Shown here: positions 7,814 through 46,033 of the stretch, in pieces
Layout of the letters: each line of letters starts with the position of its first letter
Position numbering within the stretch: position 1 is the first letter of the stretch
NCBI GenBank assembly: GCA_907165135.1
Contig: OU015568.1
Span: 6,386,001-6,450,000, forward strand
Direction: 5' to 3'
DNA from: Oikopleura dioica
Taxonomy: Eukaryota > Animalia > Chordata
DNA: 64,000 nucleotides
Made by a program: the position numbers and the translations under genes
The notes under the pieces: generated by a model
Seen by the model: the letters and a program-made list of their open reading frames with translations, nothing else
What the model was told of the DNA's origin: nothing
Databases searched by the model: none

Positions 7814-9162
7814 ATGGCCTGGCATATCATAGAGAAACTGCTTGAAGAAGTTGCAAAACACTCGACTTTTGTTGGAAAAGTCTGGATCACGGCGATATTC
7901 CTCTTCAGAATCGTCGTCGTTACTAGAATTTGCGACACAGTTTATCACGACGAGCAGGCAGCTTTCCGCTGCAATATCAAACAGCCCGGTTGTGAAAACG
8001 TCTGCTTCAACGATTTCAGCCCAATAAGCCACGTGAGATTTTGGGGATTTCAAATCATTGCCGTTGCTTTACCCTCGATCTTGTTCATCGTTTACGCAGC
8101 TCATGAAGTCGGGAGGAAGATTTCACGACCGGCAGGGAATCAGAAACTGGGCACGATAAAAGGACCCATTGGAAGAATCGGCAGTCGTCTAAGAACCCAT
8201 GCGCGATCTCAAAGAAACTCAAAGTATGTTTTTTCAATGAAAAAGTTTTTAAATAATTTTAGGCCAATAACGGGAAACAGTCTATTCGAGCAGAAACCAA
8301 AGAATACGAAAGATTATTTCAAAAAATTTTTGAAATTTCTTTTCTCGAAAAAACGCACCAGAAGAACTTTGGCCAAGCAGAAGAAGAAGTCGATTGAAGA
8401 AACCGCTGGCCAGGAGGGCGAAATCAAACAGATAGAGCTGAATCTCTGCAGAGGATACATTATACAGTCGGTTGTCAGATGCGTTGTTGAGATTTTCTTC
8501 GCTTTCTTCCAGGTACTTTTTTTATAAGTGAGCAGCTTTTTCTATTCCTTCTTTTGTAGTACCGACTTTTTGGATTTGAAGTCCCGGAAGTAGTTAAATG
8601 CAACCTCGATCCTTGCCCAAACTCTGTCGACTGCTACATCTCTAGGCCAAAAGAAAAACGAATCTTGTTGATCTTCATGTTTTGCATCTGCATTCTTTGC
8701 ATCTTCCTGAATCTTTTGGAGATTGGAACATTCATTTCATACAGGTTCTCTCGCTCTATTGCCATCATAGAAGGTTGACGAGTTTTTTTAGCGTGGAAAG
8801 ATATCTGGATGCGCGAAAAGAACTTCGAAAATCGGTGCGTGTGGCTGATTTCAACCCTGATAAAATTGTCCGGCGGTATTCTGTCGACCTTCTCAGGTAC
8901 AGTAGCAAATCAAAGAAGTATTTATAATATTATCAGAGATGATGATGATCACAAAAGCAAGTCGAAAGATTTCGGAATCGGTGATGGCTCAAAGCAGCAT
9001 AAAATGTACGCTAAATCGTTTCTTCACCCTGATGGTCCTACTGTAAGAAATCCATATTACAAGTTATTCATTAATGATCTTGCTGTTCAGAACCATCAAG
9101 AGTCTGAAGAAGAAGAATATCGAAGGCGCATTGATCTCGTCCATTCCGACAATTATATTTAG
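7814..9162 (+). CDS. Connexin (gap junction protein), multi-exon
   Basis: MAWHIIEKLLEEVAKHSTFVGKVWITAIFLFRI; EL1 CNIKQPGCENVCFNDFSPISHVRFW; EL2 CNLDPCPNSVDCYISRPKEK read at 8600-8660. GT-AG introns at about 8224-8262 and 8513-8560. Confidence 0.95.
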
Positions 9163-31771: not shown

Positions 31772-32926
31772 ATGGCATCAGAAGATCTCGAGCAAGCGAA
31801 ACAAATCATGACCGAATCGCAGCTAGAAACCTGGGAGAACCTCCGGAAGCGGGATACTGTCACTGAAGGAAGAAGGGATAGTTACAGTGTCTACGCCAAC
31901 GGAGAAACTATTCCAGAGCCAAAGAATCAAGAAGAAGAGGAAGAAGAAAAGTCAAAATTCAAGCTCGTGAAAAAGTCAGAAATCGACGCGCTAGAATCTC
32001 GCCTCCAAGATCTCAACGGCAAAATACAAGCGATCGGGGATGTTGATTTGAAAAGAACAAATTGTGAAATCGAGAAGACAGAGAGTTCCATTGAAAATCT
32101 TTACGCCTTGCTAGAATTTGAAAATTCTATTTACGAAAGAGAACTGGAGAATTACTCGGAAATTGAGACGAATTTCAGGGACCTAGAAGAAGCTGTCCAG
32201 GTACAGAAAAGTTCATTTTTTTTCTCCAAAAGAGGGACCCATTTTTCTAGGATCGAGTAGAAGAACTTTCTTTGGAATTCAACGCCTCTGAGAAATTCCG
32301 CCAACTGCGAGAATACGACGAAATCATCAATCGAAACAAACGAGCTATCCATGAGCGTCTTGAAAAAATTCGAGAATCGCGAAAAAGCCAAAAGCGCGAA
32401 GCAGAAAACGCTCGAAAAGAAGCAAGAATCGCCGCACTCGCCCGGAGCGAGTTTCAAAACATTCCAGAAGCGAAGATGAGCTTTTTGAACGCGTCGCATG
32501 CGAAACAACGGCTGGAGATCATTTTGGCCACGGAGGTTTCTTCCAGGGAAAAATTGGAGAAGGTCTTTTTGGATGATAGAGCCGGAATTGAGGAAAATAT
32601 TAACAAAATGCTCGTAAGTTTTTTCAGGCTTTTTTTTATATTGAAAATGGGTAGATTCGGCCAGCGAGGGCTACTTTGGGAGGTATATTTTCAGTGATAA
32701 TTTTCAGATAGACGCGCACGAGCGAGAATCCGCCCACAAAGAAAAACTCGACAAGCTCGAACAACTCGTCGCCGAAGAAAAACAGTTCCACGAAGCCCAA
32801 TCCATCGAGCGATCCTGGCATCAGGAAAACCTTGAGAAGCTGAAAAAAGATTATCTTCGGAAGAAAAAAGAGAAAGAAGTGAAGATCAAAAATCTAACTG
32901 CCGAAATTCATTTGTACAAAAACTAA
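31772..32926 (+). CDS. Coiled-coil protein of unknown family
   Basis: Three exons of Glu/Lys-rich heptads (ORFs 31772-32260 and 32272-32697, last exon ending YKN* at 32924-32926). The 5' end is uncertain. Confidence 0.65.
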
Positions 32927-36000: not shown

Positions 36001-39000
36001 ACCGAGCTCCGTTTGACAAAGCCCTTGGCTTGCTGGACTGTGATTTGTTCAAGAAACTGACAGGTCTTGTTCTAAAGCTGGATGATCCACTTGCTTCAGC
36101 TGTTGAAAAGCTTGGATATCTTCTAGCTCTAGCATTATTACACGGCCGTGGCGGTTGGATAAAAGAGCAAGGGGTAGACAAAGAGCTGGCGAAATGGGGA
36201 GACGAGAATTCAGGAGGAAAGACGACCTTCCCATGGCTAGAGTGGATCCAGAATCAAGTCGGGAATGCATCAGATGGCGCCGCAAAGGCAGAAGACTCGA
36301 AATCCGAGTGGAAGAAACGCGCCGCCGCTTCCCGAGCAGCTCTCTTGGCAAAAATGAAAAAACAGCAGTCCAATGCAATGAAAAACTTCTCCCACGACAT
36401 GACAAAAAGTTTCGAAGAAGAAACGTCGGAGGAAACAATGGGCGAGGAAGACAACGAGTTTCAGGTCGCTCCAGAGATCACCGAGTTGTTTCTCGACAGG
36501 GATGATAAGTTTTCGATGTCTAAGATCAACACGATCGATGATGTCTGGACCTGTATCTTGTGTCAATCTGATTCGCAGGTGGAATCTGAGTCTGATGATC
36601 CACTGCTGATGCTTGGTTATTTCGAGGAATCGACTGTCCTCGATCGTTACAAAACTCGCGAGGAAATTCTCCACGACCACGAGCTTTTTCTCGACCACGA
36701 TTGGGCCCGACCTCTTGATGCCAAGTGTGGAACTCATTTGACCACATGTGGTCATGTCTTGCACCACAGTTGTTTTGAAAAAAGCCTTGAGATCGCGAAG
36801 AACCAGGAGAATCGCTATTCGCAGATAAGATTCCGAGAGGGAAGCTGGAAGTTGCCAAAAGAGTTTACCTGCATGCTTTGCTCAAGAATATGCAATACAG
36901 TCATGCCACTGATTGATAGAGCGACGCACAAGAGGCTTAGATTCGAGCCCAAAAGGAATATCACCAGCATTGCGGAGAAACCAAAGACAGTCGGGCAGAA
37001 AATCGACGCGATGAAAAAAGAAGAAACCTCGACAAAAATGAGCAAAGACATAAAATTCTTCGAGTGGCTTTCGGAACTTCAAGATGAATTCGGATTTCCA
37101 AAGAAGCATCAGCCCCAGAATTATGTCGTCAGTCTCGGGACAATCGACATGGGAGAAGCTGGCGATAAGACTTATAAGGAGAAACAGTCAGCAGCTGATC
37201 TGAATGATAATGACGAGGAGGAGAGTACCGTTGACGATTTGAACAGAGGCTTTGTTGAGGAGAAGAGCACGGTTGGAGAAAAGTCCACTACGAATCACTC
37301 CTTCGACTCTGAAAATTGCGATGAAGAGTCAATTGGCAGCACGGATTCGGACGCGCCGAGAATGTCAAAATTCTCCCGAATTGTCCACACTTACCGTGAC
37401 ATCCACCAGAACTACGAGAAAAATGGAAACGGTCATTTTCAAACTGCTTCGTACTCAATTGCCGCTGCGGAAGCGCTGCTGCGATACGATAACAAACCGC
37501 TGATGGGTTCTCTCCCTGTCAGAAAAGACAAAGGGCTGGAGTTTCTGATCCGAAGCGCGCTGTACCTTTTTGGCAGTGCCGAAACAGGAAAAGCTGAAGA
37601 TGAATATCTCTCATCAACGCGACAGGAAGCCAGAGTAATCATCAAAAACATCATCGCAGATCCGCGAATGACTTACGATGTCCCGGCACTCCTCACTCTT
37701 GATCTTTTCCACGTTTATCTGACTCTCTTACTCGACTTACCTTACCTCGACCATCTCAAGGTAAAGACCCTCCACACTTTCTATTAGTAAGCGCTTACTT
37801 CTTTTATTGTAGCCACTTCAACACCAAAAAATTGCAGACAAGTTCTTTTTCCGTCTTATTCTCGCTGCCCAAATCACCCAAATCGCACTTTTTACCTCCA
37901 ACTCCATCATCTTCGAGGAACCTGAAGTCTTCACCGAAGTTGACGATTGCCAAGCATCGGTCTTCGCCTACCTGGTCTATCAACTACGTAGCCATTACAG
38001 AGGCCTTGAACCGCTGCACGTATCGCCGTTCATGATCTACCAGCACTTTATCCAATGTCTAACGCCGTTCGTTCGAAAGGTCTCTCTGTTGCTCATGTAT
38101 TTGAATCTTCTTGAACCGCCACCAGAGCTGTCTGATGGAAGGACGTCTTGGGAGTCGATGTGCCTCTGTCTTGGCATTCCAGACTCACTTTGCGAGCTGT
38201 TCGATGCTGATGGTGGAGCCCTAGAGGTAAGAAAAATATCATTCGAGCAAAGTTCTGAAAGAGTTATAGCCTTACGCCGAACGATGGATAAAACAACTCA
38301 TCTCGAGGGAAGACAAGTTTTCATTGAAAAACGCCCTCAAAGATGTATCCTTCCCGCAGCTGATCGAAATCCCATCACTAGCTACCTTGCCATCTGACTA
38401 CAGAAATGTGCTGACAATGGTCGCTGAAGCCAAATCTGAGCCGATAACGGTAGTCAATCAAGAGAACGAGGAAAATTCTGCAAATAATGCCGAATCGAAG
38501 AAAACAAAGTCGAATCAACAAATCTGTCCGGCAATTAAAAATCCCGCCGTTTGCCTTCTCTGCAACAAGGTCGTTTGTGTCCTGTCTGATTCTTACAGCG
38601 AGAAAAGTAAGTCCTTGAGTATTCCTCTTATGAAATGAAAAATTAGTTGACGATACCATCTACGGTGGCGGGTTACATCATGCAATGACATGCGGCCGTG
38701 GCATAGGACTGTTCATGCTTGTCGCATTTTCCGACCGAAATGCATATACCGACGCGATTTTCCAATTCTGCTCCGGCGTCAAAATCATTCTCCGAGATCC
38801 CGAAGTAGTTGGAATTCAAAGCGATATTCTCTTGCGAGGCGATCTTTTCCGTCCGAGAAATATAAAACCAGTCCAAGTTGGGCTCGTTAACTTTGAGTAA
38901 GTAGAAAACAAGATCTACTTTCTTCAATCGCTTTTTTAGCTTGCCATACGTTGATTCACACGGGGAGCCTGATCGAGGACTCAAATCTGGTGCCAAACTT

Positions 39001-39175
39001 CTTCTAAGGTACTTTTCGAATTCAAACCATTCTTTGACGGTTTTATAGTTCAGAAAACTACGAACGCCTTCGGCGCGAGTGGCTAGCTCACGAGATCTCA
39101 GATTCAGTTTCCCGCGAGATCGAGCTTAGCTCCAGCCGAACTCACTTGATGTCCAGCCATTGGTACTCGTTCTAG
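33007..39175 (+). CDS. UBR1/2: N-end rule E3 ubiquitin ligase UBR1/UBR2-like
   Basis: UBR box [30 protein letters not shown]...GGTCDCGDLEAW, ClpS-like LYNDEVHSYDEV, RING-H2 CILCQ...CGHVLHHSC...CMLC, C-terminal PAVCLLC...HAMTCGRGIG and YVDSHGEPD. Confidence 0.93.
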
Positions 39176-39183
39176 CGTTCTTT

Positions 39184-39355
39184 TCAAACTTCACGCTTCA
39201 CTTTTTGTTCAAAATTACCTTCTGCCTGATGGATTCAGTTTTCATGTTTTCTTCTTTATCTTCTTGCTAATAAATTTAACTTTCAAATACTTTCGTTAAA
39301 AAATGTGTCTTTGAAGAATGGCTTACAGGCCGCCGGCTAGGTACTCTGGCAGTAC
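39184..39355 (+). repeat. 172 bp direct duplicate of 41027-41198 (polyA signal, acceptor and first codons of DDX42)
   Basis: Near-identical sequence at an offset of 1843 bp, including aataaa and ATGGCTTACAGGCCGCCGGCTAGGTACTCTG. Confidence 0.97.
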
Positions 39356-41016
39356 GCCGGCTTTTCCGAATCCACACAATCAGATGCCGATGGGCGATGC
39401 GACACCAGCGCATCCAGTTTACAACGACTCTGACCAATTCCATGGACAAACGGGAGAACGAAGGTTTTCGAGAGAAGAAGACGATCATCGAGATCATGAT
39501 CGAAGTCGGGATAGAGACAGTGACGATTCAGAAGAAGACTTGGAATTGAACGAATTTGTTGACAAAATAAAATGCTTCCAATCAAAATCTGGTAATTTTT
39601 GAAATTTTAATACTTTACTAATTGTTTGTTTTAGCCAAGAAAATACGTAAATTGAAAGAACAACTGGCCCAGAAAAACGAAATAATCTTCAATTTACGAA
39701 AAGAGCTGACGAAAGCCCAGGACGAGCTGAAAGCCCAGAATGCCTCAGACCCAGACCTTGAAGAGCTGCAAATAATCTCCCCAAGCAAAAAGAAGCGCGC
39801 AAGAAGGTCAATGAACCATGCGTCCAATAGTTCAAATTCTGAAGAAGAAGTTCTCTCCAGCGCGAAAATTTCATCTCGTTCGAAGAAAATCCTGAAAAAG
39901 GATGAAAAACCCAGCACAAATATCAGTACAAGTTCGAATGGAAATCAGATGCTGGCGTCAAAACTACTCAACCTAAAGCCCAAAGAAACATTACCTCTTC
40001 CGAAGAAATCTCGTTCACAGGCGGACAGAATTTCGACTAAAAAGCCCTCTGTTAGTCGTTCTCGCCAATCTTCCAAACAAAAAACTCAAGACATCTCCCA
40101 ACACTTCATCAAAAAGTCCTCCAAGATTACTCCAGAAAAGTCGGCTCCACCAAATAATTCGTACTCGCCGTTAGAAGACATTGAACTAATCGACTCTTCC
40201 GAAGACGACGACATGACGCAAATTTCATTGCTCCACAAAACTGGGAACCAAACTGATACTCAACATTTGATGAACCCGTCGCCAGCAACTACAAATGGAA
40301 TGAACAGTCGGCTAGGAAACTGGCTCAAGAATGTGCAGGAAAACGCAAAGAAACGCAAGCACGCTGCTAGTCCTAAACCAGCTCGACAGTCACGGTACTT
40401 TCAAATTTTTCCTCATAATTTGAAAATATAAAAATAGGAGCAAAGCCGACTTGGAGTCGATGATAGCTGACGACGACGAGACAATGTGTCAAACGTCAAA
40501 AATCTACAGAGCTAGTTCCAAGTCACGATCTCGATCGGTTTCTCCAAAGCCCAGCTACTCCAAGAACGACGTTTCGGCAGAGGAGCTACTTTTCGGAGGA
40601 GCTAGCCAAACACCGAAAAGAGAAGATTCCGATACAGAGGAAAACGTAATGGCGCAGAAAAAGAAGCAGCGATTCGTTGGAAATATTCCAGTGGACACAC
40701 AAGGGAGGAGAATCAACGAAAAGATAAATTTCGGAGAGGGTTCAGCTAAAACTATTATTATTGATTCAGAATGAAAATTATTCTTTTGAATAATTTCGAT
40801 ATTTTAGACTGTTTACAACCCTTGAAAGATTTGATCGAACGAGCCAAGTTCAACCGATTGAATGATTCCGATCTGTTCCGCCAGCCTCCCTCTCCATCCC
40901 TCGATGGCAGTCAGTGGGAGCCTCGTTATCCCGAAAATAATTTCGACAATTTCTGGTGCACGGATGATGATAAACGATTGCCAATTTCAAGTCAGCGAAG
41001 GCGACCTCATATTTGA
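39318..41016 (+). CDS. Chimeric gene: DDX42-derived first exon fused to an unrelated coiled-coil/low-complexity protein
   Basis: The ORF starts MAYRPPARYSG (DDX42 start), continues PAFPNPHNQMPMGD...RDRD (DDX42 end), then unique DSEEDLELNEFVDKIKCFQSKS, an intron, and KKIRKLKEQL..., with further GT-AG-joined exons to 41016. Confidence 0.75.
39355..39520 (+). repeat. 166 bp duplicate of 43724-43889 (last coding exon of DDX42)
   Basis: Near-identical sequence at an offset of 4369 bp, in the same reading frame, with about five substitutions. Confidence 0.97.
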
Positions 41017-41160
41017 TTTATACATATCAAATTTCACGCTTCACTTTTTGTTCAAAATTACCTTCTGCCTGATGGATTCAGTTTTCGTGTTTTCTTCTTT
41101 ATCTTTTTGCTAATAAATTTAACTTTCAAATACTTCCGTTAAAAGATGTGTCTTTGAAGA

Positions 41161-44037
41161 ATGGCTTACAGGCCGCCGGCTAGGTACTCTGTCAGTACAA
41201 ATAGACAGGGCTACAAGACTCTAGCCGAGTTGCCTGATGATATTCCCACATGGACGACGAACTCGGGCAAATCTAACAGTAATAAAAGAAGACGAATGGC
41301 AGATGAAGATAGTTATTTTGACGACGACGATGATGATCCACCACCACCAAGTAAAACCTCATTCTTCCGCAACCAGATTCCTGATTATGCTTAATCTTTC
41401 TTTAGCTAAATCAACATACGATCCCTTCAATCCAACCGAAGACGGTTCGCAAGCTGCTAATGATGACGAAGATGAAATAGACCCCCTGGACGCTTTTATG
41501 GCCGAGAACAATAAAAAAGCAGCGATCGATAAGAAAAATATCGGCAAATCTAAGCCCAAGCAAAGAGCAGTTAGAGAAGACATCGAGAAAAAAGATTCAG
41601 AGGAGCAATTTTACGACTACATAAAGGTAAAGATATTCAATCTTACTGATGATCACGAATTTACTTTATACAGGCGAATCCCAACGCGGGAAAAGCCTTC
41701 ACACATGCGGAAGAAGAGGCTGAAGAAGAAATCGTTTACGACGAGTATGGAAACGCCACAAAAGTCAAGAAAGAGATTGACCCTCTACCAGTGATCTATC
41801 ATTCCGAAATCAACTATCCATCATTCCAAAAGAACTTCTACAAACCCCACGAAGATATTCAAAATGCGTCAAAGAACCAAATCAACAAACTTCTCGGAGA
41901 ACTCGGAATTAGAATCGCTGGATATCAGCCGCAAAAGCCCGTTTCTTCCTTTGGACACATGGGATTTCCTGATCGGCTGTTGGAGAGGATACGAAAAGTG
42001 GGATTCACAGATCCGACTCCGATTCAGTCCACGGCGATTCCTCAGATTTTGGGTGGAAGAGACGTGATTGGAATCGCTCAAACTGGATCTGGTAAAACCG
42101 CTGGGTTCGTGTGGCCAATCATCTATCACGTGACAAAGCAAAGACCGCTCAAATACGGTGATGGACCCAGAGCGTTGATAATGGCTCCGACCAGAGAGCT
42201 GTGTCAGCAGCTGTACGCCGAGGTGCGAAAATTTTCGAAAAACTACGACTCCGTCCGCGTCGGAATCTGCTTTGGTGGAGGGAACATGTACGAGCAAGGG
42301 AAAGAATTGAAGATGGGTGTCGAAATTCTCGTCGCTACGCCTGGCCGTTTGATCGATCATGTCAAAAAAGGAAACACCGAACTCTCGAATTGTACCTTGA
42401 TTTGCCTGGATGAGGCTGACCGAATGCTGGAACTTGGATTCGAGCCTCAAGTGCGCTCGATTTGCAACCACGTCCGTCCCGATCGACAGTGTCTTTTCTT
42501 CAGCGCTACTTTCAAGAAGAAAATTGAAATGCTCGCAAATGATATTCTCAATGATCCGGTGAAGCTCACGCAGGGGCAAATTGGTCAAGTGAACGAAAAT
42601 GTCACGCAGACCTTTAAAATTCTCGGCCAAGGTGATTTATTATTTCTCAAACGAGTGATTGAACAGTCCTAGAACAAAAACTCCACTGGTTACTTACCAA
42701 TATCGTTCCGTTAACGGCCGAGGGATCTTTGCTCGTCTTCGTCACGAGAAAAGCTGATTGTGTGACAGTCCATGAAGAATTGAAGAAAAATGGCTTCAAG
42801 ACTGGAGTTATTCATGGAGACATGCATCAGGTTTTCAAAATCACTCTTTCTTGTTTAATCTATTTCAGGCGGAACGAAATGATGCAATCCAAGCATTCAA
42901 GCAGCGGAAACTCGCGACTTTAATCGCCACAGATGTCGCTGCCCGTGGTCTTGACATTTCTCACATCAAAACTGTAATCAACTACGACCCTGCTAGAAAT
43001 TATGACACTCATGTTCACCGGGTTGGTCGAACTGCCCGAGCTGGAAATACCGGAACGGCTATTTCTCTGTTTACTCCTCAAGATACTGAGTACGCAGGCA
43101 TCGTTGTCCGGTCAATTGAGACAACAAAACAGGTGATCATTAACTTCTGAAATCAAGGAAGACTAACGAAATTTTAGCCTGTTCCTGATGAGATGCTCAG
43201 ACTGGCTATGCGAGATCCAGGCTTCAGGATGACTCGAGGCAAAGATGGGAAGAACATTGGATATTCAGACAATGATCGTGGTGGATTAGGGTCTGGCAGT
43301 GGAAACAAATTTGTTCCAGAGTTCGTCGAATATAGAGCGCCAGCAGGAACAGCAAAGAATCCATACCTGGAGCGCCCACCGCCGAAAGATCCATCACTTG
43401 CCGTTCCACCACGTAAGATGTGCTTTTGCCCAACTTTTAAAATCAAAAAATTTATTAAGAAAATCGACCGAAGCCGATGGGTTCGGGCGCAGGAAATCCA
43501 CCACAGGGAGTTCAAGGAGTTTCTGGTGTTCTTCAAGGACAAGGAAGCTCCGTCATGTCCGATCGAGCGATTGCGATGAGAAAAGCGATGCAAAGTCGTT
43601 TCGGGCGATCATTTGTGGCTGGGAAAGCGGATGAAAAGCCGAAAATTGAATACACGGATCCCAGCGTGCGCCCTACTCTTGACCAGCTGTACCAAGAGCA
43701 TACTACTGGAATGCCAGCGGTGGCGCCGGCTTTTCCAAATCCGCACTATCAGATGCCGATGGGCGATGCGACACCAGCGCCTCCAGTTTACAACGACTCT
43801 GACCAATTCCATGGACAAACGGGAGAACGAAGGTTTTCGAGAGAAGAAGACCATCATCGAGATCATGATCGAAGTCGGGATAGAGACAGAGACCGAAGAG
43901 ATCGGGACCGTGACAGAGACCGAGACCGGGATCGCGACCGGTACGATCGAAGAAGAGACGATCGTGACAGAGACCGTGATAGAGATCGTCATCGTGACCG
44001 CGATCGTGATCGAGAGAGAAGATCTCGATGGAACTAG
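41161..44037 (+). CDS. DDX42: DEAD-box RNA helicase DDX42-like
   Basis: DEIDPLDAFMA; HSEINYPSFQKNFYKPH; AQTGSGKT; PTRELCQQ; DEAD; SAT; ARGLD; HRVGRTARAG; C-terminal RD dipeptide repeat ending RSRWN. Confidence 0.92.
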
Positions 44038-44162
44038 GAAAATTGTAAACCCAACTTATTCTTACTCTGCCAAAACTCATTTCTTTAACATCTAAGTAAA
44101 ATTTTATAAACTCATTACTCCAGTCACTGGAGCCCAATCTCTCAGCACACATGATTTAGAAA

Positions 44163-46033
44163 ATGGCGGGTGCAGTGATAGAAAATGTATCTTCGAAAAA
44201 GCTCTGGATAGGCGGAGCGGTTATTTTCGGCTTTGCCGTACTTGGCTTTGTCCTGGGAGGGGTCTACATCACGAGCAGCCCTAATCGTGCGGATGAAAAT
44301 ATTGCTACAGAGGTAATCTTATTCTTATCATCAGAAGTTCATTATTATTAGTGCTGGGATGCATCCGGCGATTTTGAACAAGACATCGGCATCATGCCTT
44401 GGCACCCAGAAGATGCCGCAGTTTTACCTTCCCAACAATGCCGCGTGCTTACCGATGAAGATCGAGCAAAAGTCCCTAATTCTCAAAATGAAAAGATCGT
44501 CTTCTCACTTCACATTCCTGTCAATGGCGAGGTTCTGACCCGCTGGTTTAGCTACATGCTCGTTCTGGTGTATCCAGAACTCAAATCACTTGCGAAACCG
44601 AATGCGACCCAAATCTGGTTTGATGCTAAATGTGAGTATTCAGAAAAGATTAAAAATAAGAACGTAACGGCCGTTTAGTCTATCACCGAGACAATCCGAA
44701 TGAAAAATGGTCGCTCAGTCACAAAAAACATTTCTCAAGAAACTACAATTGCGAAGAAATGAAATTTCCTGGCGGCGTAGACTACGCTTGCCAACCGATG
44801 AATTTCGTCGAACTGGGCAGTGTTCCTCACAAATACTATCTCGTCAACTTCAAGCTTCGTAAATTCGACGCAGAGGGAAATCACATCAACGAAAAAATCG
44901 GCATCTTCAGCCATGTCAACATGCCAGTAATCTATCAAAGTCCTGAATTCACCAAGTTGTGGCTCAGTCTCCAAACCTGCGTTTTCTTCTCTCAGTGGTT
45001 CTTTCTCGTTTGGTTTGCCAATCGAATTTCGCAGCTGAGAAGGCCAAAGACGCTCATTGAAAAGTCAATTCTAGCGCTTGGAATTTCGATTCAAATTGGA
45101 AACTTTCCTGTTCAATGGCTGGCGCTTTTCATGGAAGCGCCTTGGATGCTGCTTCTTTCCGACATTCGACAGGGTCTGGCGTACATGACTCTCTTTGGCT
45201 TCTGGTTGATTTTCATGAGTGAGCATTTGCTCGACAAGCCACATCGGGACAATTTGAAGAACTACGCTCTCCAGCTCTGTTTTGTTCTCCTCTGCGGGCT
45301 TTCCATGTTCGTTCTTGATTGTGTCGAGCGAGGCTGGCAACTGAAAGATCCTTTCTGGTCGGTTTGGGACACTGTTCACGGGCGAAATGCAGCTCATGCC
45401 ATGCCCATTGTTGGAGGAATCTTCGGCGCGCTTTACTTGGTCAACTTGAGCGTGATCATCTTCAGAGTGAGCTACAACTTGTTCAAGCGGCAGCAACACT
45501 TTGTCGGAAAACTCCATGCTGAAGGACTGATCTTACGTTTCCAGGTAGAACGAGTCCTCTATGATTTCAAAATTTTGAATAAAATTTAGATCATCATTGG
45601 ATTCACTTTCTTCTGCGCGATTGCTTCTCTTATCGCCTTTTACTACAACGAAGCAACTGATACGCCTGTTATCATCAACAACCATCATATTCAAGTAAAT
45701 CTACAAATAGAAATCCATCTTCAAAGAGACCTTTCAGGTTCAATCAGCTATCTACACAGGTCTCTACGTTTTGTGGAATTTGTATGTCTTATCCGTGATG
45801 CTTCTTTACGGTAAATCCTCCTCTATAAAACAATCGATACCTTTTTTTCAGCTCCGAGCCACAAATTTGGCTCAAACGCGGATTTGTCCGAAATGGCGCC
45901 TTTGAATTCCGAGGTTTCTTCTGTTTCCGGATCTCGAGTTGACTCCCTCCAGTCAATTTCCCATCAAACTTCTACGCGCGACGATATGCACTTGCTAGCT
46001 ACGCTCACTGCTGATAAAACAACTGCTGACTAA
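44163..46033 (+). CDS. WLS: Wntless (Wnt secretion factor)
   Basis: MAGAVIENVSSKKL N-terminus, YACQPMNFVELGSVPHKYYLVN, LLLSDIRQG, FWLIFMSEHLLD; multi-pass TM segments. Confidence 0.95.

What the first reader, a model, noticed from the sequence alone, without database searches (positions are those of the whole stretch)
39184..41198. Young chimeric gene inserted in the operon, with a first exon stitched from the start and the end of DDX42
Seen: 39184-39355 copies 41027-41198 (polyA signal, acceptor and 12 codons). It is joined at a 1 nt overlap to 39355-39520, a copy of 43724-43889, skipping about 2.5 kb of the helicase core. The frame is preserved across both junctions and continues into an unrelated multi-exon ORF, which ends just before the second copy of the intergenic unit. 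The unrelated gene is therefore bracketed by 172 bp direct repeats that give it an operon entry site and a 3' end. Inference: a route for gene birth or operon recruitment via duplication with internal deletion or template switching.
Basis: partly seen in the sequence, partly recalled or inferred. Interest (0 to 1): 0.8.

Follow-up and report, generated by a model that had tools for sequence, protein, structure and literature searches.

The report
Three-source chimeric gene in tunicate operon
In the tunicate Oikopleura dioica, a coding-only copy of a gene from 5 Mb away sits between two operon genes, and a duplicated 172-base junction unit plus two pieces of the neighbouring DDX42 gene supply its start codon, likely splice-leader entry site and 3' end; it still evolves like a working gene, so it shows base by base how an operon can adopt a promoterless gene copy.

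Summary
Window 39184-39355 repeats 41027-41198 (172 nt, 6 substitutions, no indels). Window 39355-39520 repeats 43724-43889 inside the last DDX42 exon, with a 1-nt overlap at the first junction, and the frame is kept.

New here: the "unrelated ORF" has a parent. Window 39516-41021 is a 93-94% copy, introns included, of OKI2018_I69.PAR.g11771, which lies 5.1 Mb away on the opposite strand. That locus is the ancestral one, because its spectrin/X/downstream synteny is kept in the Bergen genome. The copy starts at codon 7 of the parent, at a 5-nt microhomology (GACAG), and ends about 5 nt after the stop codon. It therefore lacks a promoter, ATG and poly(A) signal; the duplicated unit supplies the last two.

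The copy looks functional. The ORF and splice sites are intact. Changes unique to it are 33 synonymous to 11 non-synonymous (p=4e-14). This is more constrained than the parental allele (9:20).

My best reading is a DNA-level complex rearrangement with three junctions, possibly one serial template-switching event, that created an operon-resident chimeric gene.

No RNA data, second assembly or population data could be consulted, so expression and the ancestral UBR-DDX42 adjacency remain inferred. The joined spliced protein was never searched; exons were searched separately.

The parts
39172..39174 (+). Stop codon (TAG) of the upstream UBR1/2-type N-recognin gene
   Evidence: Reading of the last exons; Pfam UBR box, ClpS, UBR1 wing and PRT6_C on the upstream exons
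39184..39355 (+). D1 copy 1: almost the whole UBR 3' UTR, AATAAA (39269-74), short intercistronic spacer, sole AG acceptor (39315-16), ATG (39318) and 12 codons identical in origin to the DDX42 start
39355..39520 (+). D2 copy: 55 codons copied from the last exon of DDX42 (43724-43889), joined to D1 at a 1-nt overlap, in frame
39516..39520 (+). Junction 2: 5-nt microhomology GACAG shared by DDX42 (43885-89), the parent gene and the chimera
39516..41021 (+). X': 93-94% copy (exons and introns) of OKI2018_I69.PAR.g11771, from codon 7 to about 5 nt past the stop; the parent lies at G000:C1:11570240-11571837, minus strand
39318..39591 (+). Chimeric exon 1: 12 codons from the DDX42 start, 55 codons from the DDX42 tail, 25 codons from X exon 1
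39635..40394 (+). Chimeric exon 2 (coiled coil plus K/S-rich region)
   Evidence: the exon 1/2 and 2/3 junctions match spliced mRNA-type sequences P0005 and P0006 of a related lineage
40438..40739 (+). Chimeric exon 3
40808..41016 (+). Chimeric exon 4 with stop TGA at 41014-16; this C-terminal region is conserved (62% identical in Bergen)
41022..41026 (+). Junction 3: about 5 nt of filler with no identified template, between the end of X' and D1 copy 2
41027..41198 (+). D1 copy 2: now serves as the 3' UTR and AATAAA (41112-17) of the chimera, and as acceptor plus ATG (41161) of DDX42
41161..44037 (+). Intact DDX42 gene, the donor of D1's coding end and of D2
43724..43889 (+). Source of D2 in the last DDX42 exon, just before its Arg/Asp-repeat tail

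Best explanation
This is a real, DNA-level chimeric duplicate gene in the Okinawa Oikopleura dioica genome. A coding-only copy (codon 7 to stop, with introns) of the fast-evolving gene PAR.g11771 ('X') was placed between the UBR N-recognin gene and DDX42. X normally sits 5.1 Mb away, next to a spectrin gene. The same rearrangement, or set of rearrangements, duplicated a 172-nt unit (UBR 3' UTR, AATAAA, spacer, AG acceptor, ATG and 12 DDX42 codons) and added 55 codons from the DDX42 tail. As a result the X copy gained a start codon in frame, an acceptor site of the type seen before every downstream gene of this cluster, and behind it a 3' UTR with a poly(A) signal, while DDX42 stayed intact. 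I infer that the chimera is transcribed from the operon's promoter, cut out by spliced-leader trans-splicing at 39316/39317 and polyadenylated after 41117. I also infer that it makes a protein of about 513 residues: X with a new 67-residue N-terminus. Sequence evolution shows that the X part is kept by purifying selection. The simplest origin is one replication-type event with serial template switching: copy through D1 to 41198, jump 2.5 kb ahead to 43724, jump to X on the other strand at GACAG, then return 172 nt behind the first jump. Shown: the anatomy, the donors, the direction of copying, DNA-based origin and selective constraint. Inferred: expression through the operon, and a single-event origin.
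For: Anatomy and frame. Parent copy: the only other match in the 64.3-Mb genome, 93-94% identical and including introns. The parent is the annotated gene OKI2018_I69.PAR.g11771. Direction of copying: the parent locus keeps spectrin/X/downstream-gene order in the Bergen scaffold FN654307 and in metagenome contig L007, and the parent has its own ATG and 5' flank, which allele L006 shares. Junctions: 1-nt overlap, 5-nt microhomology, about 5 nt of filler. Not an artefact: the copies differ only by substitutions (3.5%), and X' carries 54 private substitutions. Constraint: pairwise dN/dS is 0.16. Changes private to X' are 33 synonymous to 11 non-synonymous (p=4e-14 against the neutral expectation). 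Changes polarised by outgroup L008 are 7 synonymous to 5 non-synonymous (p=0.006). There are no frame-breaking indels, and all six splice sites are kept. A start codon must come from the DDX42-derived part, because the X-derived part of exon 1 has no ATG although it and the following coiled coil are conserved. Operon context: same strand, with 143 and 144 nt between stop and ATG. The same layout (an AG 1-3 nt before the ATG) occurs at five other gene starts in the window, and AATAAA was seen upstream in the UBR case. This fits the 500-bp operon criterion and the 'genes can insert into other operons' proposal of PMC11067885, and the short intercistronic distances reported for O. dioica (PMC7986045). 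A single event is possible: D1+D2 divergence (12/342) matches the X' private branch (54/1291, p=0.65).
Against: No transcript, spliced-leader read or protein evidence could be consulted. No protein of 243-773 aa matching the chimera is in the protein collection, so the public annotation may lack it or fuse it with a neighbour. No independent assembly or metagenome contig shows the junctions. The DDX42-derived 67 codons carry 4 non-synonymous and 2 synonymous differences from their sources, which does not show constraint on that part. Pairwise X'-parent divergence (7.0%) exceeds that of D1/D2 (3.5%, p=0.017). I explain this by allelic coalescence at the parent locus, but it would also fit a stepwise history. 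The acceptor TTTGAAG is weaker than the TTTAG/TTTCAG forms.
Confidence: 0.7

Rival explanations
1. The same end product arose stepwise. One route is a tandem duplication of D1 plus DDX42 up to about 43889, then an internal 2.5-kb deletion, then insertion of the X fragment. Another is an older X copy between UBR and DDX42 whose 5' end was later replaced by D1+D2.
For: Pairwise divergence of X'/parent (7.0%; synonymous about 17%) is higher than that of D1/D2 (3.5%; p=0.017). This could mean that the X copy is older than the D1/D2 duplication.
Against: Three independent events would all have to keep the frame and leave no other scar. X homology starts exactly at the D2 junction and ends within about 5 nt of D1. 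The excess divergence disappears when the private X' branch (4.2%) or allele L006 (5.7%, p=0.13) is used. Nearby repeats may also be homogenised by gene conversion.
Confidence: 0.3
2. The chimera is a dead by-product of a complex rearrangement: not expressed, or not translated in this frame.
For: No RNA evidence. No matching annotated protein was found. The DDX42-derived part shows no clear constraint (4 non-synonymous to 2 synonymous).
Against: A 513-codon ORF remains open across four exons with all splice sites kept and no frame-breaking indel, despite 4-7% divergence. Private changes are 33 synonymous to 11 non-synonymous, which is more constrained than the parental allele at 9:20 (Fisher p=2.8e-4).
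Confidence: 0.1
3. Assembly artefact: a chimeric read, a mis-join or an uncollapsed haplotype created the structure.
For: Only one assembly could be examined. The repeats sit at every junction.
Against: Artefactual copies would be near-identical. Here each piece differs from its source by 3.5-7% through substitutions only, with a selection signature, and the junctions lie in frame at microhomologies. Repeats of 172 nt spaced 1.8 kb apart pose no problem for long-read assembly.
Confidence: 0.03
4. Transposon-mediated capture (Pack-MULE or hAT-like cargo) or retroposition brought X in.
For: The same genome holds Mutator elements that carry host gene pieces (earlier notes s1-360591 and s1-360603). 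A MITE-like element lies just upstream of the parent gene.
Against: There are no inverted repeats of 30 nt or more in 38000-45000. The inserted segment has no terminal inverted repeats at its ends and no short target duplication. The introns are retained and there is no poly(A) tract, so it is not a retrocopy. Host-derived sequence runs right up to each junction.
Confidence: 0.03

Closest known systems
DNA-level chimeric new genes from partial duplication (for example Drosophila Sdic, and the chimeric duplicates catalogued in C. elegans by Katju and Lynch; from my own knowledge)
   Same: A partial duplicate of one gene is fused in frame to pieces of a neighbour, with introns retained, and takes its 5' end and regulation from the recipient locus.
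   Different: The recipient here is an operon. What is borrowed is an intercistronic unit (poly(A) signal plus trans-splice acceptor plus ATG) rather than a promoter. That unit is duplicated, so one copy opens the new gene and the other closes it. The first exon has three sources.
Microhomology-mediated break-induced replication / FoSTeS complex rearrangements (from my own knowledge)
   Same: Several templated segments from near (2.5 kb) and far (5.1 Mb, inverted) are joined at 1-5 nt microhomologies with a short filler, and a duplication marks the return point.
   Different: Those are known mainly from human disease alleles and cancer. Here the product is a selectively maintained gene, and a single event is inferred, not shown.
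Operon switching in Oikopleura dioica (Plessy et al. 2024, PMC11067885)
   Same: That paper proposes that operons free genes from needing their own promoter and allow them to insert into other operons. This locus fits that proposal.
   Different: The paper argues from genome-wide synteny. This is a single case resolved to the base, it involves a duplicate rather than a moved gene, and it shows how the acceptor, ATG and 3' end were supplied.
DDX42 (SF3B-associated DEAD-box helicase)
   Same: The chimera shares the first 12 residues and 55 residues of the C-terminal low-complexity region with the DDX42 next door.
   Different: It has no DEAD or helicase C domain, so it is not a helicase paralogue.

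Membership tests
DNA-based chimeric duplicate gene | Each segment has an identifiable donor elsewhere in the genome | tested here: met
   D1 and D2 come from DDX42 and its upstream spacer; the remainder comes from PAR.g11771
DNA-based chimeric duplicate gene | Introns of the donor retained (not a retrocopy) | tested here: met
   All three introns align with the parent's introns
DNA-based chimeric duplicate gene | Fusion is in frame, and the ORF and splice sites are intact | tested here: met
DNA-based chimeric duplicate gene | Maintained by selection | tested here: met
   33 synonymous to 11 non-synonymous private changes, p=4e-14; outgroup-polarised 7:5, p=0.006. This applies to the X-derived part only.
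DNA-based chimeric duplicate gene | Transcribed and translated | not testable with these tools
   No RNA or peptide data; no annotated protein found
O. dioica spliced-leader operon member | Same strand as its neighbours, with an intergenic distance of at most 500 bp (criterion of PMC11067885) | tested here: met
   143 nt from the UBR stop to the ATG; 144 nt from its own stop to the DDX42 ATG
O. dioica spliced-leader operon member | Poly(A) signal of the upstream gene closely followed by an AG acceptor just before the ATG | tested here: met
   AATAAA at 39269-74, the sole AG at 39315-16, ATG at 39318. An AG 1-3 nt before the ATG is also seen at gene starts 31772, 33007, 41161, 44165 and 46302.
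O. dioica spliced-leader operon member | Spliced leader found on the mRNA | not testable with these tools
   No transcript data available
MMBIR/FoSTeS-type complex rearrangement | Two or more template switches with microhomology or short insertions at the junctions | tested here: met
   Junction 1 has a 1-nt overlap, junction 2 a 5-nt GACAG microhomology, junction 3 about 5 nt of filler
MMBIR/FoSTeS-type complex rearrangement | All junctions formed in one event | tested here: inconclusive
   D1/D2 divergence equals the private X' branch (p=0.65) but is lower than the X'-parent distance (p=0.017)
Retrogene | Intronless copy with a poly(A) remnant | tested here: not met
   Introns present and no A-tract at 41017-41026
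Transposon-captured gene fragment (Pack-MULE / hAT cargo) | Terminal inverted repeats and a short target-site duplication flanking the cargo | tested here: not met
   No inverted repeats of 30 nt or more in 38000-45000; the ends are host sequence
DEAD-box helicase (DDX42 paralogue) | DEAD and helicase C-terminal domains | tested here: not met
   No Pfam family on any of the four exons at E<=0.1
Shugoshin (lead for the X family from the language-model search) | Shugoshin_N coiled coil and the basic Shugoshin_C motif | tested here: not met
   The Atlas score is only 0.84, within the range of shuffled controls. Pfam at E<=10 on P0002, P0003 and P0005 gives only weak coiled-coil noise. The motif-like stretch spans the exon 3/4 junction, and the joined sequence was not searched.

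The most novel reading that the evidence does not exclude
One replication template-switching event turned a fragment with no promoter, no start codon and no terminator into an immediately expressible gene, by duplicating an operon's intercistronic unit around it. The operon copy is now the better-conserved of the two copies (33 synonymous to 11 non-synonymous, against 9:20 in the parental allele of the same genome). If so, the gene's function is moving from its ancestral stand-alone locus into the operon. This would be a directly observed mechanism for the operon switching and gene-order scrambling seen among O. dioica lineages.
Probability: 0.3. Interest if true: 0.75.

Novelty: new variant of a known kind. 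Interest (0 to 1): 0.58.

Why it matters
Oikopleura dioica lineages differ by thousands of rearrangements and rarely share operons. It has been proposed that operons let genes move without their promoters (PMC11067885). This locus shows, base by base, how that could work. A single 172-nt unit, when duplicated, supplies the 3' end signal of the gene in front and the entry site and start codon of the gene behind, so even a bare coding fragment can become a gene. The locus also offers a testable case of chimeric gene birth by multi-template rearrangement in a chordate, with both parents still present in the same genome. It may also show a functional hand-over from the parental copy to the new copy.

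Tried and rejected
1. Independent evidence for the chimera was sought in three ways, and all were blank. These were a word-based protein search with the exon-1 ORF, a scan of JGI metagenome contigs with the exon-1 peptide, and a scan with an exact D1 core. The blanks are uninformative: even the native DDX42 first-exon ORF is absent from those collections.

2. A search with the annotated parent protein (243-773 aa range) found no annotated chimera. The public annotation may miss it or fuse it with a neighbour.

3. I tried to reach the Bergen genome through the genome search, to test UBR-DDX42 adjacency. This is not possible, because that collection holds only prokaryotes.

4. Function of the X family: no Pfam hit on the exons or on full-length relatives. 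The Atlas search gave a shugoshin/CtIP-like lead at 0.84, which is within the range of shuffled controls, so I rejected it as evidence.

5. Transposon capture and retroposition are rejected. There are no TIRs, the introns are kept and there is no poly(A) tract.

6. The 90-nt extra segment in the parent is not a repeat family or introner; it is unique in the genome.

7. Ganot et al. 2004 (PMC507004) is not held in the library.

8. All protein searches used single exons or ORFs by reference, and dN/dS was computed exon by exon without split codons.
Full report
**Organism and locus.** Earlier notes of this scan name the genome as Oikopleura dioica. The genome has 64.28 Mb in 19 contigs, and the paralogue of the gene studied is annotated as Oidioi.mRNA.OKI2018_I69.PAR.g11771 on a contig of 17,092,476 nt. 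The window is G000:C1:6386001-6450000. It is not human, so no restriction on that ground applied.

**Observation.** The repeat finder and a base-by-base comparison confirm both repeats.
- D1 is 39184-39355 = 41027-41198: 172 nt, 6 substitutions, no indel.
- D2 is 39355-39520 = 43724-43889. The tool extends it to 39524/43893, but the mismatch at 39521 marks the true end.
- The two repeats share the single base 39355.
- Each D1 copy contains AATAAA (39269-74 and 41112-17), an AG 2 nt before the ATG (39315-16 and 41158-59), the ATG (39318 and 41161), and 12 codons plus 2 nt. In copy 1 this AG is the only one between AATAAA and the ATG.
- D2 lies within the last DDX42 exon, in the DDX42 reading frame, just before the Arg/Asp-repeat tail.

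**Neighbouring genes.** The downstream gene is DDX42: the best solved-structure hits are human DDX42 at E=2.8e-102, against 2.7e-70 for the next family. The upstream gene is a UBR1/2-type N-recognin with UBR box, ClpS-like, UBR1 winged-helix and PRT6_C domains. It ends at TAG 39172-74.

**Gene model of the chimera.**
- Exons are 39318-39591, 39635-40394, 40438-40739 and 40808-41016. All introns are GT-AG, and the stop is TGA at 41014-16.
- The first two splice junctions are corroborated by intron-free, mRNA-type sequences of a related lineage. P0005 and P0006 read '..KAKS-A-TKIRK..', and P0005 also reads '..SSS-R-SKADLESM..'.
- The third intron is my canonical reading. The public model of the parent (P0002) uses a different, non-canonical splice there.
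- Each exon was searched separately by reference, and no exon hits a Pfam family.

**The captured gene has a parent.**
- A search of the whole genome with 39100-41300 finds one other locus, C1:11570240-11571837 on the minus strand. It is 93-94% identical over window 39516-41021.
- The alignment covers exons and all three introns, so the copy was made from DNA.
- The parent's first exon opens with its own ATG and six codons that the window copy lacks.
- Homology begins inside GACAG (39516-39520), which is shared by DDX42 (43885-89), the parent and the chimera. This is a 5-nt microhomology within a looser 11-nt resemblance.
- Homology ends about 5 nt after the stop codon. About 5 nt with no identified template follow (41022-26), then D1 copy 2.
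- The copied piece is therefore essentially bare coding sequence, with no promoter, 5' UTR, ATG, 3' UTR or poly(A) signal. The first exon is stitched from three sources: 12 + 55 + 25 codons.

**Direction of copying.**
- In the Bergen scaffold FN654307, the X orthologue (P0003, about 50% identical) lies head-to-head with a large spectrin gene. It is followed by the same downstream genes as at the I69 11.57-Mb locus.
- A marine-metagenome contig from a related lineage (L007) shows the same spectrin/X arrangement.
- The 11.57-Mb locus is therefore ancestral, and the window copy is derived.

**Real and constrained.**
- An assembly artefact would give near-identical copies. Here all pieces differ from their sources by substitutions only.
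- A third sequence, L006, is a metagenome contig with the parental 5' flank and first exon, so it is an allele of the parent locus. It allows changes to be assigned. Over 1291 sites there are 54 changes private to X', 34 private to the I69 parent and 18 private to L006.
- In coding sequence the private X' changes are 33 synonymous to 11 non-synonymous. About 79% non-synonymous is expected without selection (p=4e-14).
- Where the more distant L008 can polarise changes, X'-derived changes are 7 synonymous to 5 non-synonymous (p=0.006).
- Pairwise dN/dS is 0.16.
- No frame-breaking indel occurs in about 1.34 kb of compared coding sequence, and all splice sites are kept.
- The I69 parental allele has 9 synonymous to 20 non-synonymous private changes. 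This differs significantly from X' (Fisher p=2.8e-4).
- The X-derived part of exon 1 has no ATG, yet it and the following coiled coil are conserved. Translation must therefore begin in the DDX42-derived part: at 39318, or at the in-frame ATGs near 39384-39392.
- The DDX42-derived 67 codons carry too few differences (4 non-synonymous, 2 synonymous, unpolarised) to say anything about constraint on them.

**Operon context.**
- UBR, the chimera, DDX42 and the next gene are co-oriented. The gaps from stop to ATG are 143, 144 and about 127 nt.
- An AG 1-3 nt before the ATG also occurs at the starts at 31772, 33007 (UBR), 44165 and 46302. AATAAA was seen a few tens of nt upstream in the UBR case.
- This fits the operon definition of PMC11067885 (same strand, at most 500 bp). 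It also fits the short intercistronic distances reported for O. dioica, which has a single spliced leader (PMC7986045).
- PMC11067885 explicitly proposes that operons let genes 'freely insert into other operons'. This locus is a concrete candidate for that process.
- Trans-splicing at 39316/39317 remains an inference.

**Age and number of events.**
- D1+D2 differ by 12/342 (3.5%). X' differs from the I69 parent by 7.0% and from L006 by 5.7%. The two parental alleles differ by 4.2%, and all three are about 13% from L008.
- The D1/D2 value equals the private X' branch (4.2%, p=0.65) but is below the X'-parent distance (p=0.017).
- I attribute the excess to allelic divergence at the parent locus that pre-dates the copying: D1 and D2 were copied in cis, whereas X' is being compared with non-donor alleles. 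In the central block X' shares derived states, and the absence of a 90-nt segment, with L006 rather than with the I69 parent.
- One event is thus possible but not proven. A stepwise history remains a serious rival.
- The event is 'young' only in the sense that it post-dates the split from the L008 lineage.

**Mechanism (inferred).** The layout is [UBR][D1][D2][X', inverted donor][filler][D1][DDX42 intact]. It is what serial template switching during replication or repair would give:
- synthesis through D1 to 41198;
- a switch at 1-nt homology to 43724;
- about 166 nt of synthesis;
- a switch at GACAG to X, 5.1 Mb away on the other strand;
- 1.5 kb of synthesis to just past the stop;
- a return 172 nt behind the first exit.

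End-joining capture of fragments at a staggered break would give the same product. Transposon capture and retroposition are rejected, because there are no TIRs, the introns are kept and there is no A-tract.

**Function of X.** X is a fast-evolving protein: Okinawa and Bergen copies are about 50% identical. It is largely disordered (Atlas model pLDDT 0.42), with an N-terminal coiled coil, a K/S-rich middle, an acidic 'IELIDSSEDDD' stretch and a conserved C-terminal exon that is 62% identical in Bergen. No family could be assigned. The shugoshin-like lead at 0.84 is within noise.

**Searches that came back blank.** No protein with the chimeric exon 1 and no annotated chimera of 243-773 aa were found. 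Two metagenome scans were also blank. These blanks neither support nor weaken the reading.

**Verdict.** The locus is a new variant of a known kind, a chimeric duplicate gene. It is notable because a duplicated intercistronic unit turns a bare coding fragment into an operon gene, and because both donors and a selection signature are visible in one genome.

Noticed in passing
L005:7237-7326 (minus strand; parent gene PAR.g11771, exon 2); the corresponding point in the window is 40027/40028: The I69 parental allele has a 90-nt segment with in-frame stops. The public model removes it as a non-canonical GA-AG intron. A shorter version is present in the more distant contigs L007 and L008. It is absent from the window copy and from allele L006, and the flanking residues are exonic in Bergen-type mRNA sequences. 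The segment is unique in the genome, so it is not a repeat family. It looks like an intron presence/absence polymorphism within one gene.
   Followed up: partly
L005 about 8020-8556 (minus strand), roughly 150-700 nt upstream of the parent gene's ATG: A foldback, MITE-like element with terminal CTGGGCGC(G/C)CC-type ends and internal arrays of 'GTCCAAGTGAAGC' in inverted orientation. It widens the spectrin-X spacer to about 3 kb in I69, against roughly 100 nt in contig L007.
   Followed up: no
G000:C1:11570240-11571837 (parent gene), compared with window 39516-40806: The parental allele of this genome has 20 non-synonymous to 9 synonymous private changes, clustered around the 90-nt segment, while the operon copy has 11:33. 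This may reflect relaxed constraint on the parent after duplication.
   Followed up: partly
window 31772, 33007, 39318, 41161, 44165, 46302: Every co-oriented gene start in this stretch has an AG 1-3 nt before the ATG, and in the UBR case AATAAA lies about 50 nt upstream. This suggests a long operon-like run from about 31.7 kb to beyond 46 kb.
   Followed up: partly
window 43891-44018: The DDX42 C-terminus is an imperfect Arg/Asp dipeptide repeat encoded by a degenerate GAC/CGN periodic array. The D2 breakpoint sits at its start, and GAC-rich microhomology probably helped the template switch.
   Followed up: no
L009:10001-18978 (Bergen scaffold FN654307): The public Bergen protein P0003 appears to fuse the X orthologue to the next gene downstream. 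Its C-terminal residues match the gene that follows X in the Okinawa genome, and it lacks the conserved last exon of X.
   Followed up: partly
window 40730-40830 and the parent model P0002: The public model of the parent joins '...KINF' directly to 'DLIERAKF...'. A canonical GT-AG intron (window 40740-40807) would instead keep nine more residues, reading '...KINFGEDCLQPLKDLIER...'. RNA data are needed to decide between the two.
   Followed up: no
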